From contig NC_043000.1 in assembly GCF_006345805.1 (NCBI RefSeq), forward strand, positions 115,692,001 to 115,756,000: DNA of 64,000 nt, given 5' to 3'. Below are positions 11,352 to 16,005 of this stretch, piece by piece. Origin of the DNA: Octopus sinensis (taxonomy: Eukaryota). The notes under the pieces are model-generated. The model was not told the origin of the DNA. It saw nothing but the letters and a program-made list of their open reading frames with translations, and did no database searches. Both the position numbers and the translations under genes were made by a program. How positions within the stretch are numbered: the stretch's first letter is position 1; every line of letters starts with the position of its first letter.

Positions 11352-11609
11352 TCTTTCGAGACGGATTGGAACCACCGACCTAAGGATGACAGTCACATAT
11401 TATTATACCTATTTCTTTATTACCCAGAAGGGGCTAAACATAGAGGGGACAAACAAGGACAGACATAGGTATTAAGTCGATTACATCGACCTCAGTGCGT
11501 AACTGGTACTTAATTTATCGACCCCGGAAGGATGAAAGGAAAAGTCGACCTCGGTCACATATTATTATACCTCTACAGTCCTCCGCTCTACCAACTGAGC
11601 TATCGCGAG
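11352..11609 (-). pseudogene. trnY: tRNA-Tyr copy 4, SINE in intron, G57C and acceptor-stem mismatches
   Basis: tctttcgag and attggaacc variants; 185-nt intron. Confidence 0.85.
11411..11553 (-). mobile_element. 5'-truncated SINE-A (143 bp) in tRNA intron
   Basis: TSD gtcacatattattatacct at 11392-11410 and 11554-11572. Confidence 0.93.
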
Positions 11610-11701
11610 AACTGAAGTGTTGGTTGCAAAATAAATGATAATAGGTAATAAGCGCTTGAATGCTGTATGCCAAAAAAAGATTGTACAAAAATTATTAACG
11701 A

Positions 11702-11797
11702 TCTCGCGAGACGGATTCGAACTACCTACCTAAGGATGACAGTTACGTATTATTATACCTCTACAGTTCTCCGCTCTACCAACTGAGCTATCGCGAG
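11702..11797 (-). pseudogene. trnY: tRNA-Tyr copy 5, degenerate (G30A, C48A, G52A)
   Basis: Substitutions in anticodon and T stems. Confidence 0.75.
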
Positions 11798-11889
11798 AAC
11801 TGAAGTGCCGGTTGCAAACTAAATGATAATAGGTAATAAGCGCTTGAATGCTGTATGCCAAAAAAAGATTGTACAAAAATAATTAACGA

Positions 11890-11985
11890 TCTCGCGAGAC
11901 GGATTCGAACCACCGACCTAAGGATGACAGTTACATATTATCATACCTCTACAGTCCTCCGCTCTACCAACTGCGCTATCGCGGG
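11890..11985 (-). pseudogene. trnY: tRNA-Tyr copy 6, variant (T2C, T12G)
   Basis: Acceptor and D-stem mismatches. Confidence 0.7.
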
Positions 11986-12076
11986 AACTGAAGTGTTGGT
12001 TGCAAACTAAATGATAATAGGTAATAAGCGCTTGAATGCTGTATGCCAAAAAAGATTGTACAAAAATAATTAACGA

Positions 12077-12172
12077 TCTCGCGAGACGGATTCGAACCAC
12101 CGACCTAAGGATGACAGTTACATATTATTATACCTCTACAGTCCTCCGCTCTACCAACTGAGCTATCGCGAG
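12077..12172 (-). tRNA. trnY: tRNA-Tyr(GTA) copy 7, consensus
   Basis: Intact cloverleaf. Confidence 0.93.
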
Positions 12173-12263
12173 AACTGAAGTGTTGGTTGCAAACTAAATG
12201 ATAATAGGTAATAAGCGCTTGAATGCTGTATGCCAAAAAAGATTGTACAAAAATAATTAACGA

Positions 12264-12359
12264 TCTCGCGAGACGGATTCGAACCACCGACCTAAGGATG
12301 ACAGTTACATATTATTATACCTCTACAGTCCTCCGCTCTACCAACTGAGCTATCGCGAG
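12264..12359 (-). tRNA. trnY: tRNA-Tyr(GTA) copy 8, consensus
   Basis: Intact cloverleaf. Confidence 0.93.
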
Positions 12360-12451
12360 AACTGAAGTGTTGGTTGCAAAATAAATGATAATAGGTAATA
12401 AGCGCTTGAATGCTGTATGCCAAAAAAAGATTGTACAAAAATAATTAACGA

Positions 12452-12547
12452 TCTCGCGAGACGGATTCGAACCACCGACCTAAGGATGACAGTTACATAT
12501 TATTATACCTCTACAGTCCTCCGCTCTACCAACTGAGCTATCGCGAG
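12452..12547 (-). tRNA. trnY: tRNA-Tyr(GTA) copy 9, consensus
   Basis: Intact cloverleaf. Confidence 0.93.
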
Positions 12548-12639
12548 AACTGAAGTGTTGGTTGCAAACTAAATGATAATAGGTAATAAGCGCTTGAATG
12601 CTGTATGCCAAAAAAAGATTGTATAAAAATAATTCACGA

Positions 12640-12727
12640 ACTCGAGAGACGGATTCGAACCACCGACCTAAGGATGACAGTCACATACCGCTACAGTGCT
12701 CCGCTCTACCAACTGAGCTATCGCGAG
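12640..12727 (-). pseudogene. trnY: tRNA-Tyr copy 10, 15-nt intron, A73T, G68T, G30C
   Basis: actcgagag end; 8-nt intron deletion; cagtgctcc. Confidence 0.75.
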
Positions 12728-12819
12728 AACTGAAGTGTTGGTTGCAAACTAAAGGATAATAGGTAATAAGCACTTGAATGCTGTATGCCAAAAAAAGATT
12801 GTACAAAAATAATTAACGA

Positions 12820-12915
12820 TCTCGCGAGACGGATTCGAACCACCGACCTAAGGATGACAGTCACATATTATTATACCTCTACAGTCCTCCGCTCTACCAA
12901 CTGAGCTATCGCGAG
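12820..12915 (-). tRNA. trnY: tRNA-Tyr(GTA) copy 11, consensus
   Basis: Intact cloverleaf. Confidence 0.93.
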
Positions 12916-13007
12916 AACTTAACTCTTGGTTGCAAACTAAATGATAATAGGTAATAAGCAATTGAATGCTGTATGCCAAAAAAAGATTGTACAAAAATAA
13001 TTAACGA

Positions 13008-13103
13008 TCTCGCGAGACGGATTCGAACCACCGACCTAAAGATGACAGTCACATATTATTATACCTCTACAGTCCTCCGCTCTACCAACTGAGCTATCGC
13101 GAG
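13008..13103 (-). tRNA. trnY: tRNA-Tyr(GTA) copy 12, C41T
   Basis: Same variant as copy 1. Confidence 0.85.
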
Positions 13104-13195
13104 AACTGAATTGTTGGTTGCAAACTAAATGATAATAAGTAATAAGCGCTTGAATGCTGTATGCCAAAAAAAGATTGTACAAAAATAATTAACGA

Positions 13196-13829: not shown

Positions 13830-13920
13830 ACTGAATTGTTGGTTGCAAACTAAATGATAATAAGTAATAAGCGCCTGAATGCTGTATGCCAAAAAAAGAT
13901 TGTACAAAAATAATTAACGA

Positions 13921-14178
13921 TCTTTCGAGACGGATTGGAACCACCGACCTAAGGATGAGAGTTACATATTATTATACCTATTTCTTTATAACCCACAATG
14001 GGCTAAACATAGAGGGGACAAACAAGGACAGACATAGGTATTAAGTCGATTACATCGACCCCAGTGCGTAACTGGTACTTAATTTATCGACCCCGGAAGG
14101 ATGAAAGGAAAAGTCGACCTCGGTCACATATTATTATACCTCTACAGTCTTCCGCTCTACCAACTGAGCTATCGCGAG
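13921..14178 (-). pseudogene. trnY: tRNA-Tyr copy 16, SINE in intron, G57C, acceptor mismatches, G29A
   Basis: Same haplotype as copy 4 with extra changes. Confidence 0.85.
13980..14122 (-). mobile_element. SINE-A (143 bp) in tRNA intron
   Basis: Same insertion point and TSD. Confidence 0.93.
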
Positions 14179-14270
14179 AACTGAAGTGTTGGTTGCAAAA
14201 TAAATGATAATAGGTAATAAGCGCTTGAATGCTGTATGCCAAAAAAAGATTGTACAAAAATTATTAACGA

Positions 14271-14366
14271 TCTCGCGAGACGGATTCGAACCACCGACCT
14301 AAGGATGACAGTTACATATTATTATACCTCTACAGTCCTCCGCTCTACCAACTGAGCTATCGCGAG
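14271..14366 (-). tRNA. trnY: tRNA-Tyr(GTA) copy 17, consensus
   Basis: Intact cloverleaf. Confidence 0.93.
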
Positions 14367-14458
14367 AACTGAAGTGTTGGTTGCAAACTAAATGATAATA
14401 GGTAATAAGCGCTTGAATGCTGTATGCCAAAAAAAGATTGTATAAAAATAATTAACGA

Positions 14459-14554
14459 ACTCGAGAGACGGATTCGAACCACCGACCTAAGGATGACAGT
14501 CACATATTATTATACCTCTACAGTCCTCCGCTCTACCAACTGAGCTATCGCGAG
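14459..14554 (-). pseudogene. trnY: tRNA-Tyr copy 18, A73T, G68T
   Basis: actcgagag 3' end. Confidence 0.7.
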
Positions 14555-14646
14555 AACTGAAGTGTTGGTTGCAAACTAAAGGATAATAGGTAATAAGCAC
14601 TTGAATGCTGTATGCCAAAAAAAGATCGTACAAAAATAATTAACGA

Positions 14647-14742
14647 TCTCGCGAGACGGATTCGAACCACCGACCTAAGGATGACAGTTACATATTATTA
14701 TACCTCTACAGTCCTCCGCTCTACCAACTGAGCTATCGCGAG
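14647..14742 (-). tRNA. trnY: tRNA-Tyr(GTA) copy 19, consensus
   Basis: Intact cloverleaf. Confidence 0.93.
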
Positions 14743-14833
14743 AACTGAATGTTGGTTGCAAACTAAATGATAATAAGTAATAAGCGCTTGAATGCTGTAT
14801 GCCAAAAAAAGATTGTACAAAAATAATTAACGA

Positions 14834-15091
14834 TCTCGCGAGACGGATTCGAACCACCGACCTAAGGATGACAGTCACATAATATTATACCTATTTCTTT
14901 ATTACCCACAAGGGGCTAAACATAGAGGGGACAAACAAGGACAGACATAGGTATTAAGTCGATTACATCGACCCCAGTGCGTAACTGGTACTAAATTTAT
15001 CGACCCCGAAAGGATGAAAGGAAAAGTCGACCTCAGTCACATATTATTATACCTCTACAGTCCTCCGCTCTACCAACTGAGCTATCGCGAG
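14834..15091 (-). tRNA. trnY: tRNA-Tyr(GTA) copy 20, perfect exons with 185-nt SINE-bearing intron
   Basis: Exons match the consensus; SINE at 14893-15035. Confidence 0.75.
14893..15035 (-). mobile_element. SINE-A (143 bp) in tRNA intron
   Basis: Same SINE haplotype as copy 13. Confidence 0.93.
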
Positions 15092-15183
15092 AACTGAAGT
15101 GTTGGTTGCAAAATAAATGATAATAGGTAATAAGCGCTTGAATGCTGTATGCCAAAAAAAGATTGTACAAAAATTATTAACGA

Positions 15184-15279
15184 TCTCGCGAGACGGATTG
15201 GAACCACCGACCTAAGGATGACAGTTACATATTATTATACATCTACTGTCCTCCGCTCTACCAACTGAGCTATCGCGAG
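15184..15279 (-). pseudogene. trnY: tRNA-Tyr copy 21, G57C and T33A
   Basis: attggaacc and ctactgtc variants. Confidence 0.8.
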
Positions 15280-15371
15280 AACTGAAGTGCTGGTTGCAAA
15301 CTAAATGATAATAGGTAATAAGCGCTTGAATGCTGTATGCCAAAAAAAGATTGTACAAAAATAATTAACGA

Positions 15372-15468
15372 TCTCGCGAGACGGATTCGAACCACCGACC
15401 TAAGGATGACAGTTACATATTATTATACCTCTACAGTCCCCCCGCTCTACCAACTGAGCTATCGCGAG
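15372..15468 (-). pseudogene. trnY: tRNA-Tyr copy 22, altered anticodon stem (+1 nt)
   Basis: cagtccccccg versus consensus cagtcctccg. Confidence 0.65.
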
Positions 15469-15560
15469 AACTGAAATGTTGGTTGCAAAATAAATGATAA
15501 TAGTTAATAAGCGCTTGAATGCTGTATGCCAAAAAAAGATTGTACAAAAATAATTAACGA

Positions 15561-15656
15561 TCTCGCGAGACGGATTCGAACCACCGACCTAAGGATGACA
15601 GTCACATATTATTATACCTCTACAGTCCTCCGCTCTACCAACTGAGCTATCGCGAA
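15561..15656 (-). tRNA. trnY: tRNA-Tyr(GTA) copy 23, C1 lost (T1)
   Basis: Same variant as copies 3 and 15. Confidence 0.7.
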
Positions 15657-15747
15657 ACTGAATTGTTGGTTGCAAACTAAATGATAATAAGTAATAAGCG
15701 CCTGAATGCTGTATGCCAAAAAAAGATTGTACAAAAATAATTAACGA

Positions 15748-16005
15748 TCTTTCGAGACGGATTGGAACCACCGACCTAAGGATGACAGTTACATATTATT
15801 ATACCTATTTCTTTATAACCCACAATGGGCTAAACATAGAGGGGACAAACAAGGACAGACATAGGTATTAAGTCGATTACATCGACCCCAGTGCGTAACT
15901 GGTACTTAATTTATCGACCCCGGAAGGATGAAAGGAAAAGTCGACCTCGGTCACATATTATTATACCTCTACAGTCCTCCGCTCTACCAACTGAGCTATC
16001 GCGAG
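15748..16005 (-). pseudogene. trnY: tRNA-Tyr copy 24, SINE in intron, G57C, acceptor mismatches
   Basis: Same haplotype as copies 4 and 16. Confidence 0.85.
15807..15949 (-). mobile_element. SINE-A (143 bp) in tRNA intron
   Basis: Same insertion point and TSD. Confidence 0.93.

What the first reader, a model, noticed from the sequence alone, without database searches (positions are those of the whole stretch)
11352..16005. A SINE retrotransposed into a tRNA intron and was amplified with the array: candidate SINE-carrying tRNA intronic circular RNA
Seen: copies 4, 13, 16, 20 and 24 hold the same 143-bp 5'-truncated SINE-A in sense orientation. A 19-bp TSD duplicates the intron interior, giving a 185-nt intron with both splice junctions preserved. 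Copies 13 and 20 keep perfect exons and the -3 G, whereas 4, 16 and 24 have G57C and acceptor mismatches. Known: metazoan TSEN cuts by measuring from the mature domain and tolerates long introns. RtcB can circularise excised introns, as with the long-intron Drosophila tRNA-Tyr tricRNA. Inference: copies 13 and 20 could yield mature tRNA plus a stable circular RNA containing the SINE 3' end (its presumed LINE-recognition tail). This would be a promoterless SINE expressed from a tRNA promoter.
Basis: partly seen in the sequence, partly recalled or inferred. Interest (0 to 1): 0.9.

Follow-up and report, generated by a model that had tools for sequence, protein, structure and literature searches.

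The report
SINE fragment inside tRNA-Tyr introns
One SINE retroposon landed inside the small intron of a tyrosine tRNA gene in a 29-copy tandem array and was copied to five genes as the array grew, giving 185-base introns with intact splice signals; whether these genes still make tRNA or a circular intron RNA is untested, and an internal stop signal for the polymerase makes it doubtful.

Summary
Window 10786-16936 (minus strand) holds 29 tandem tRNA-Tyr(GTA) genes in a 188-bp unit, each with a 23-nt intron at position 37/38. Copies 4, 13, 16, 20 and 24 carry the same 143-bp promoterless 3' part of an abundant 231-bp SINE. The fragment lies in sense orientation and is flanked by an 18-19-bp target-site duplication of intron positions 1-19, giving a 185-nt intron.

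A private spacer variant and seven shared substitutions show one insertion that spread by duplication of whole monomers. Copies 13 and 20 keep consensus exons and the C32:G(-3) pair. Copies 4, 16 and 24 have G57C and acceptor mismatches, and copy 16 has also lost the -3 G.

The circular-RNA inference has no supporting evidence here and one clear obstacle. All five inserts carry a private G>T change that creates TTTTCCTTT 30 nt into the intron. In human assays a T4 run stops about 75% of Pol III transcripts. The A-to-B box gap also grows from 56 to 218 bp, and exons across the array vary almost as much as spacers.

The likeliest reading is a neutral insertion in crippled or weakly expressed gene copies. 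A low-level 185-nt tricRNA from read-through is possible. It is a neat natural case of one-step tRNA-intron lengthening. No organism was identified and no RNA data were available.

The parts
10786..16936 (-). Tandem array of 29 tRNA-Tyr(GTA) genes, 188-bp unit, 23-nt canonical intron
   Evidence: TRF period 188. 29 genes were extracted. Rfam tRNA matches 23 of them at 40-57 bits. ARAGORN in intron mode makes 27 calls in the array, 26 of them tRNA-Tyr(gta).
11352..11609 (-). Copy 4: tRNA-Tyr gene with 185-nt intron (type A), probable pseudogene
   Evidence: 258 nt. Has G57C and the acceptor 3' strand TCGAAAG, and keeps the -3 G. Exon 1 is 11573-11609, the intron 11388-11572 and exon 2 11352-11387.
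11411..11553 (-). Copy 4: 143-bp SINE 3' fragment
   Evidence: Aligns to SINE consensus positions 88-230 with 10 differences. The target-site duplication lies at 11554-11572 and 11392-11410.
11540..11543 (-). Copy 4: internal T4 run in the sense strand
   Evidence: Pre-tRNA positions 67-70, which are intron positions 30-33.
13196..13453 (-). Copy 13: tRNA-Tyr gene with 185-nt intron (type B), consensus exons
   Evidence: No exon differences from the array consensus. ARAGORN calls it tRNA-Tyr i(39,185). The intron is 13232-13416.
13255..13397 (-). Copy 13: 143-bp SINE 3' fragment
   Evidence: Identical to the insert of copy 20. The target-site duplication at 13398-13416 and 13236-13254 is perfect.
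13384..13387 (-). Copy 13: internal T4 run
13921..14178 (-). Copy 16: tRNA-Tyr gene with 185-nt intron (type A), pseudogene
   Evidence: Has G57C, acceptor mismatches, G29A and a -3 G>C change. ARAGORN does not call it. The intron is 13957-14141.
13980..14122 (-). Copy 16: 143-bp SINE 3' fragment
   Evidence: Identical to the insert of copy 24. The target-site duplication lies at 14123-14141 and 13961-13979.
14109..14112 (-). Copy 16: internal T4 run
14834..15091 (-). Copy 20: tRNA-Tyr gene with 185-nt intron (type B), consensus exons
   Evidence: No exon differences. ARAGORN calls it tRNA-Tyr i(39,185). The intron is 14870-15054.
14893..15035 (-). Copy 20: 143-bp SINE 3' fragment
   Evidence: Identical to the insert of copy 13. 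The target-site duplication lies at 15036-15054 and 14874-14892, with one A>T change in the 3' copy.
15022..15025 (-). Copy 20: internal T4 run
15748..16005 (-). Copy 24: tRNA-Tyr gene with 185-nt intron (type A), probable pseudogene
   Evidence: Has G57C and acceptor mismatches and keeps the -3 G. The intron is 15784-15968.
15807..15949 (-). Copy 24: 143-bp SINE 3' fragment
   Evidence: Identical to the insert of copy 16. The target-site duplication lies at 15950-15968 and 15788-15806.
15936..15939 (-). Copy 24: internal T4 run
34871..35101 (+). Closest full-length SINE copy in the window, used as reference for the family
   Evidence: 96% identical to the 231-bp consensus and 95.8% to the insert. 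Shares the ATACCTATG subfamily signature, has TTTG where the intron copies have TTTT, and carries its own 14-bp duplication GGTATGTTTTGAAT.
3280..3372 (+). Solo tRNA-Tyr(GTA) gene outside the array, used for comparison
   Evidence: Rfam tRNA at 56 bits. ARAGORN calls it tRNA-Tyr i(39,20). Its first downstream T-runs are T4-G-T4.

Best explanation
One monomer of a tandem tRNA-Tyr(GTA) array received a head-less copy of the locally abundant 231-bp SINE by target-primed reverse transcription. The first nick fell at the exon 1/intron boundary and the second fell 19 nt downstream. The duplication therefore rebuilt a complete copy of the original 23-nt intron next to exon 2 and left intron positions 1-19 next to exon 1.

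That monomer was then duplicated as a whole by unequal crossing-over or segmental duplication. It split into type A (copies 4, 16, 24) and type B (copies 13, 20). The latest step copied the block of monomers 15-18 to 23-26.

Functionally the insertion is most likely neutral to disabling. Three copies are pseudogenes through exon mutations. The two with intact exons probably give mostly a roughly 70-nt transcript ending at the internal TTTT (exon 1, 29 intron nucleotides and a U tail), made from a promoter weakened by a 218-bp A-B gap. At most a minority of read-through transcripts could be spliced to tRNA-Tyr plus a 185-nt intron.

The steps shown are the insertion, the duplication, the single origin, the order of duplications and the preserved splice motifs. 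The inferred steps are the termination at T4, the weak transcription and the lack of function.
For: - **Identical insertion in five copies.** The insertion point, the 143-bp length and the 19-bp duplication are the same in all five.
- **Shared substitutions.** Seven differences from the SINE consensus are shared by all five inserts. The inserts of copies 13 and 20 are identical, as are those of 16 and 24; copy 4 differs from 16/24 at 4 sites, and type A differs from type B at 5 sites.
- **Whole-monomer duplication.** A spacer variant (ACTTATT) is found only in the five SINE monomers. Monomers 15 and 23 are identical, 17 and 25 are identical, 16 and 24 differ at 2 sites, and 18 and 26 differ by the 8-nt deletion plus 2 sites.
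- **The element is a SINE.** It gives about 30 hits in 64 kb. Other copies carry their own 9-19-bp duplications and end at AAAGAAATA.
- **No promoter in the insert.** It starts at consensus position 88, just after the B-box-like GAGTTCAAATTCC.
- **Private T4.** The TTTT is present in all five intron copies and in none of the ten other aligned copies in the window.
- **T4 terminates Pol III.** T4 gives 75% termination in human cells (PMC5725217), and T3CCT2-type runs also terminate (PMC3141230).
- **Promoter spacing.** The A-B gap is 218 bp against 56 bp in ordinary copies.
- **Weak constraint on the array.** Exon variation per site is 0.016, against 0.024 in the spacer, and only 13 of 29 copies have consensus exons.
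Against: - T4 is leaky, with about 25% read-through in the human U6 assay. The T-run requirement of Pol III in this unidentified invertebrate is unknown.
- The array's own terminators are T5 followed by T7, which would fit a species in which T4 is weak.
- Copies 13 and 20 have no exon change at all and keep every known splice determinant. This is what one would expect if they were still used, although they are so young that it is equally expected under neutrality.
- A Drosophila tRNA-Tyr gene with a 113-nt intron is well expressed (PMC4536317), so a long A-B gap is not disabling by itself.
Confidence: 0.72

Rival explanations
1. One reading: copies 13 and 20 are transcribed from the tRNA promoter through the whole 185-nt intron. 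TSEN cuts them at the canonical sites and RtcB joins the exons into tRNA-Tyr and the intron into a stable 185-nt circle carrying the SINE core and tail.
For: Copies 13 and 20 have consensus exons, the C32:G(-3) pair, the 3-nt bulge and the 6-nt rule (rules from PMC6614914). ARAGORN accepts them as tRNA-Tyr with a 185-nt intron. Drosophila tric31905 comes from a 113-nt tRNA-Tyr intron, metazoan tRNA introns reach about 250 nt, and aptamer-bearing introns are circularised (PMC4536317). T4 lets about 25% of transcripts through in human cells.
Against: There is a T4CCT3 run 30 nt into the intron that is private to these copies, and further T2GT3-type runs lie downstream. The A-B gap is 218 bp. The array shows no sign of selection. 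Folding predicts competing partners for the anticodon loop inside the SINE (CUAUG at pre-tRNA positions 167-171, probability 0.45-0.79 in copies 13 and 24), although the same method fails to recover the canonical pair even in the native gene. No RNA data were available.
Confidence: 0.2
2. The whole array is transcriptionally silent repeat DNA, a heterochromatic tRNA gene cluster, so none of the copies matters for tRNA supply and the SINE is just one more passenger.
For: Exon variation is nearly as high as spacer variation, and 16 of 29 copies have exon changes, including anticodon-loop, T-loop and acceptor mutations. The surroundings are extremely rich in repeats and SINEs. Tandem Ser-Tyr-Tyr tRNA clusters in Arabidopsis are a described example of clustered tRNA genes (PMC13578239); that such plant clusters are largely silenced rests on my own knowledge.
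Against: 13 copies are perfect, with A and B boxes, C1-G72, A73 and T5+T7 terminators. Young arrays homogenised by unequal exchange show little per-copy constraint even when they are used.
Confidence: 0.3
3. The five-fold presence is an assembly artefact: the repeat copy number or order was mis-assembled and there is really one SINE-bearing monomer, or fewer than five.
For: The window contains a 100-N scaffold gap at 40813-40912. Some monomer blocks are identical, which is where assemblers err.
Against: The SINE monomers fall into two diverged types plus a third variant (copy 4), and each has its own exon and spacer differences. At least three distinct SINE-bearing monomers must therefore exist. 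The duplicated blocks 15-18 and 23-26 differ by an 8-nt deletion and point changes.
Confidence: 0.07
4. The insert spread between monomers by gene conversion of the intron alone, or by independent insertions at a hotspot, rather than by duplication of whole monomers.
For: The 3' duplication copy in monomers 16 and 24 reads GTAAC like most neighbours, which could be a short conversion tract. Other SINE copies in the window also have duplications that start with GG or GGTAT, so the site may be a preferred one.
Against: The five monomers share a private spacer variant about 100 bp outside the gene and cluster together in the distance matrix. The truncation point, the duplication and seven substitutions are identical in all five.
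Confidence: 0.03

Closest known systems
Drosophila tRNA:Tyr:GUA CR31905 and its circular intron tric31905 (Lu et al. 2015, PMC4536317; Schmidt et al. 2019, PMC6614914)
   Same: It is a tRNA-Tyr(GUA) gene with an unusually long intron (113 nt there, 185 nt here) at the canonical 37/38 position. It has a C32:G proximal pair, a 3-nt bulge at the 3' cut and 6 nt from C32 to the 5' cut.
   Different: The fly intron is old, structurally conserved with covarying pairs, and shown to be expressed and circular. The intron here is a recent SINE insertion with no conserved fold, contains a T4 run, sits in a decaying tandem array, and has no expression evidence.
Engineered tricRNA expression cassettes (aptamer placed in a tRNA-Tyr intron; PMC4536317, PMC6614914)
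   Same: Foreign sequence sits inside a tRNA-Tyr intron while the native intron ends and the anticodon-intron helix are kept. This is exactly what the target-site duplication achieved here.
   Different: This case is natural rather than designed. The payload is a retroposon fragment that includes a Pol III stop signal. In the cassettes the highest pre-tRNA and tricRNA levels came from an added external U6 promoter.
Ordinary 5'-truncated SINE/LINE insertions with target-site duplications
   Same: It has an 18-19-bp duplication, lacks the 5' head, ends at the family's normal 3' end, and belongs to a family with many copies nearby.
   Different: The target is the 23-nt intron of a Pol III gene, and the duplication spans almost the whole intron. 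Three full-text searches found no reported transposable element inside a metazoan tRNA intron.
Tandem tRNA gene clusters, e.g. Arabidopsis Ser-Tyr-Tyr repeats (reviewed in PMC13578239)
   Same: Intron-containing tRNA-Tyr genes are repeated head to tail many times and carry variant and degenerate copies.
   Different: Here there is a single isotype and a 188-bp unit. A higher-order structure is created by a SINE-bearing monomer, and the host is an animal.
Archaeal mobile tRNA introns (Fujishima et al. 2010, cited in PMC10714607)
   Same: Mobile sequence is associated with tRNA introns.
   Different: In archaea the intron itself moves between tRNA genes. Here a retroposon entered an existing intron, so the mechanisms are unrelated.

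Membership tests
Eukaryotic intron-containing tRNA-Tyr(GUA) gene | Cloverleaf with GTA anticodon that scores as a tRNA | tested here: met
   Ordinary copies score 40-57 bits against Rfam RF00005. ARAGORN in intron mode calls copies 4, 13, 20 and 24 as tRNA-Tyr(gta). 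Rfam itself does not span the 185-nt insert, and copy 16 is not called.
Eukaryotic intron-containing tRNA-Tyr(GUA) gene | Single intron between positions 37 and 38 | tested here: met
   ARAGORN places the 185-nt and 23-nt introns right after the anticodon, i(39,185) and i(39,23). Reading the sequence by eye puts the cut between G37 and A38.
Eukaryotic intron-containing tRNA-Tyr(GUA) gene | Intact internal promoter (A and B boxes) at workable spacing, with a downstream T-run | tested here: inconclusive
   Both boxes are intact in copies 13 and 20, and the T5 and T7 runs are present. The gap between the boxes is 218 bp instead of 56. Tolerance of such gaps is known only from yeast and fly (my own knowledge, plus PMC4536317).
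SINE insertion by target-primed reverse transcription | Homology to a short, highly repeated interspersed family | tested here: met
   The consensus is 231 bp with 32 BLAST hits in 64 kb. The insert is 93-94% identical to positions 87-231.
SINE insertion by target-primed reverse transcription | Target-site duplication flanking the insert | tested here: met
   The 19-bp repeat AGGTATAATAATATGTGAC lies on both sides. The empty site is visible in the 24 other monomers.
SINE insertion by target-primed reverse transcription | Family members carry a Pol III-type (tRNA-like) head | tested here: inconclusive
   A B-box-like GAGTTCAAATTCC and a GGCGG/CCGCC acceptor-like pairing are seen by eye. No Rfam family matches a full-length copy at E<=1.
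SINE insertion by target-primed reverse transcription | 3' tail shared with a partner LINE | not tested
   No LINE with this tail was found in the window, because every hit to the tail is attached to SINE body. No repeat library was available.
tRNA intronic circular RNA (tricRNA) precursor | Proximal C32:G(-3) pair, 3-nt bulge at the 3' cut and 6 nt from C32 to the 5' cut | tested here: met
   These are read directly from the sequence in copies 4, 13, 20 and 24. Copy 16 has C at -3. The criteria are from PMC6614914.
tRNA intronic circular RNA (tricRNA) precursor | Intron can be transcribed by Pol III without meeting a terminator (no run of four or more T) | tested here: not met
   TTTT sits at intron positions 30-33 in all five copies and is followed by CCTTTC. 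T4 gives 75% termination in human cells.
tRNA intronic circular RNA (tricRNA) precursor | Circle-junction reads or an RNase R-resistant species | not testable with these tools
   No transcriptome of the source organism was available. Exact-protein look-ups and a homology search with ORFs spanning the junctions found nothing.

The most novel reading that the evidence does not exclude
Pol III reads through the T4 often enough that copies 13 and 20 yield functional tRNA-Tyr and a stable 185-nt circular RNA made mostly of SINE sequence, namely the conserved central domain plus the tail that the partner LINE is presumed to recognise. That would be the first natural tricRNA derived from a transposable element. 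It would be a promoterless SINE fragment expressed from a host tRNA promoter, and it might bind or titrate the LINE machinery. It would also be a caught-in-the-act example of how the long tRNA introns seen in several animals arise.
Probability: 0.15. Interest if true: 0.75.

Novelty: new variant of a known kind. Interest (0 to 1): 0.45.

Why it matters
Most animal tRNA introns are short, and how the rare long ones arose is not known. The 113-nt fly tRNA-Tyr intron that gives an abundant circular RNA is one of them, and others reach about 250 nt.

This locus shows one concrete route, whatever its expression status. A retroposon inserts with a staggered cut that spans almost the whole intron. 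The resulting duplication leaves a full native intron end on each side, so every known splice determinant survives. The intron grew eight-fold in one step, and array amplification then multiplied it.

If the copies are expressed, it would be a natural counterpart of the engineered tricRNA vectors and a new way for a promoterless SINE fragment to be transcribed. If they are not, it is a clean example of how a single G>T change that creates T4 can silence a Pol III gene from inside its intron.

Tried and rejected
- **Metagenome scan for the gene.** An exact scan of the JGI metagenome collection for exon 1 end plus intron start (GGACTGTAGAGGTATAATAATATGT) found nothing.
- **Metagenome scan for the SINE core.** This found more than 120 contigs, but only about 45 bp is shared. 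The contigs belong to a different SINE family and hold no tRNA-Tyr monomer, so they give no orthologous array and no host identity.
- **ORFs as search handles.** I used ORFs spanning the two junctions to look for other assemblies or transcript contigs. The exact look-ups and the homology search all returned nothing.
- **Secondary-structure prediction.** I folded the pre-tRNAs with and without an enforced cloverleaf. The method does not recover the canonical anticodon-intron pair even for the native 96-nt precursor, so I do not rely on it for or against splicing.
- **Rfam on a full-length SINE.** This was meant to confirm a tRNA-derived head and gave no match.
- **T4 avoidance in the SINE consensus.** I considered arguing that the consensus avoids T4 (seven T3 runs, no T4). 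It equally lacks A4 (six A3 runs), so the signal is not specific and I dropped it.
- **Organism identification.** The window has no convincing protein-coding ORF, so no organism was identified. The repeat landscape suggested a cephalopod mollusc to me, but that was not tested.
- **Literature searches.** Three searches for a transposable element inside a eukaryotic tRNA intron found none. That is absence from the held library, not proof that it is new.

Full report
**What is there**

The window carries a head-to-tail array with a 188-bp unit on the minus strand (TRF 10747-16990). Reading the reverse strand and extracting units gives 29 genes between 10786 and 16936.

Each gene is a tRNA-Tyr with these features:
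- acceptor CTCGCGA/TCGCGAG and discriminator A;
- anticodon loop CTGTAGA;
- a 23-nt intron AGGTATAATAATATGT(G/A)ACTGTC between positions 37 and 38;
- downstream T5 and T7 runs.

Rfam's tRNA model matches 23 of them at 40-57 bits, and also a solo tRNA-Tyr at 3280-3372 on the plus strand. ARAGORN with introns allowed makes 27 calls in the array, 26 of them tRNA-Tyr(gta).

**The observation**

Copies 4, 13, 16, 20 and 24 are 258 nt long instead of 96. Their coordinates are 11352-11609, 13196-13453, 13921-14178, 14834-15091 and 15748-16005.

In each copy the intron reads AGGTATAATAATATGTGAC, then 143 bp of insert, then AGGTATAATAATATGT(G/A)ACTGTC. That makes 185 nt with a 19-bp direct repeat on either side of the insert. 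ARAGORN accepts four of the five as tRNA-Tyr with a 185-nt intron at the canonical site.

The 143 bp matches about twenty other places in the window. Aligning the full-length copies gives a 231-bp element:
- it has a GC-rich head carrying a B-box-like GAGTTCAAATTCC;
- it ends at AAAGAAATA;
- individual copies have their own 9-19-bp target duplications.

The insert corresponds to positions 88-230, so everything up to and including the promoter-like head is missing. It lies in the same orientation as the tRNA. The first A of the repeat could belong to the SINE tail, so the duplication is 18 or 19 bp.

G57C and acceptor mismatches occur in copies 4, 16 and 24, and copies 13 and 20 have consensus exons. 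I add that copy 16 has also lost the -3 G and has G29A.

**One insertion, then duplication of monomers**

- All five inserts share seven differences from the window's SINE consensus.
- The inserts of copies 13 and 20 are identical, as are those of 16 and 24. Copy 4 differs from 16/24 at four sites, and the two types differ at five.
- With the insert removed, the five monomers still group together. They alone carry a spacer variant (ACTTATT) roughly 100 bp outside the gene.
- Monomers 15 and 23 are identical and so are 17 and 25. Monomers 16 and 24 differ at two sites, and 18 and 26 differ by an 8-nt intron deletion plus two sites. The most recent event therefore copied the block 15-18 to 23-26.
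- Each type A copy is followed by a monomer with the same C1T change (copies 3, 15, 23). This points to an older duplication of a unit of at least two or three monomers.
- The type-specific changes include a CpG>TpG at the 5' junction of type B.

**Geometry of the insertion**

The duplication begins at intron position 1 (or 2) and ends at position 19. The SINE tail is therefore followed by a complete copy of the old intron. The segment that pairs with the anticodon loop stays in its native place next to exon 2: G(-3) with C32, then C and A with G34 and U35. The 5' cut site keeps its native downstream sequence.

These are the determinants defined experimentally in Drosophila: a strong proximal pair, an invariant 3-nt bulge and 6 nt from C32 to the end of exon 1 (PMC6614914). 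On sequence grounds, copies 4, 13, 20 and 24 are spliceable.

**What argues against productive expression**

1. **An internal Pol III stop signal.**
   - All five inserts read GAC TTTT CC TTT C at intron positions 30-33 and beyond. The SINE consensus and all ten other aligned copies read TTTG or TTTA.
   - The run lies in the sense strand. T4 is the minimal Pol III terminator and gave 75% termination in human cells (PMC5725217). In human extracts T3CCT2-like runs also terminate (PMC3141230).
   - The solo tRNA-Tyr gene in this window has T4-G-T4 as its first downstream T-runs. The array uses T5 and T7. The stringency in this organism is unknown.
2. **A wider promoter gap.** The distance from A box to B box rises from 56 to 218 bp. 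Yeast TFIIIC tolerates such gaps with reduced efficiency (my own knowledge), and the fly gene with a 113-nt intron is expressed (PMC4536317).
3. **No evidence of selection on array copies.** Variation per site is 0.016 in exons against 0.024 in spacers, and only 13 of 29 copies have consensus exons. The SINE-bearing copies (2 of 5 intact) are no different from the rest (11 of 24).

Thermodynamic folding was not informative.

**Most likely mechanism**

This is a neutral retroposon insertion carried along by array expansion. Three copies are dead through exon mutations. Two copies mostly yield a short RNA terminated at the T4, and perhaps a minority of full-length precursor. That precursor, if made, should be cut by TSEN and could be circularised by RtcB into a 185-nt RNA. 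I put detectable circle formation at roughly 15-20% and a biological role for it far lower.

**Comparison with what is known**

The nearest known system is the fly tRNA-Tyr gene CR31905 with its 113-nt intron and circular product. Next are the engineered cassettes that place foreign RNA in a tRNA-Tyr intron (PMC4536317, PMC6614914). The same paper notes metazoan tRNA introns of about 40-250 nt without explaining where they came from.

Three full-text searches found no report of a transposable element inside a eukaryotic tRNA intron. Reviews state that tricRNA function remains elusive (PMC13247085). I therefore file this as a new variant of known kinds, namely a long-intron tRNA gene and a SINE insertion. 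The structural novelty is real. The functional novelty is unproven.

**Limits**

- The organism was not identified.
- There is no coding sequence in the window.
- No orthologous locus or transcript could be retrieved.
- Copy number rests on one assembly that has a scaffold gap elsewhere in the window. At least three distinct SINE-bearing monomer types must nevertheless exist.

Noticed in passing
window 3280-3372 (+): A solo tRNA-Tyr(GTA) gene has the same exons as the array but an unrelated 20-nt intron (AAGTGTAATGTGCAATTGAC, -3 G kept). It has G rather than A at the discriminator position and T4-G-T4 as its first downstream T-runs.
   Followed up: partly
window 12640-12727 and 16286-16373 (-): Array copies 10 and 26 share an 8-nt intron deletion (15-nt intron), a G>C change in the anticodon stem and the 3' acceptor strand TCTCGAGT. 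Copy 18 has the same acceptor change without the deletion. Default ARAGORN miscalls copy 26 as tRNA-Leu(tag).
   Followed up: partly
window 15184-15279 (-): Array copy 21 has T33A in the anticodon loop, G57C and an intron change. ARAGORN in intron mode calls it tRNA-Asp with an odd intron, and Rfam does not match it.
   Followed up: no
window 18109-18523 (-) and 47869-48279 (+): SINE copies occur as tandem units of about 184 bp in which the tail AAAGAAATAGGTAT is joined to SINE positions 48-50 (GCGGTATTTCG). The same GGTAT starts the target duplication in the tRNA intron and that of the copy at 34871-35101. This suggests microhomology between the end of the SINE transcript and its target sites.
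   Followed up: partly
window SINE positions 92-136, e.g. 34962-35006; loci L001-L120: A block of about 45 bp (AGCCTTTCATCCTTTCGGGGTCGATAAAT...) is shared almost exactly with a different tRNA-headed SINE family found in more than 120 JGI metagenome contigs, presumably host DNA. It behaves as a conserved SINE central domain. From memory it resembles the Nin-DC/Inv type, but I did not verify this. The tRNA-intron insert begins just before this domain.
   Followed up: partly
window 26671-26799, 27472-27863, 51759-52364: A second, more diverged SINE family shares only positions 1-169 with the first and has a different 3' part. It includes a 218-bp tandem duplication at 51889-52386.
   Followed up: no
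window 10572-10677 (-): A diverged SINE fragment (72% identity to consensus positions 69-171) lies about 110 bp beyond the last array monomer. It may mark the original edge of the array.
   Followed up: no
window 40813-40912: There is a run of 100 N, which is a scaffold gap in the assembly.
   Followed up: no
window 62625-62967: There is a 113-bp tandem repeat with three copies at 96% identity. It has no relation to the tRNA array.
   Followed up: no
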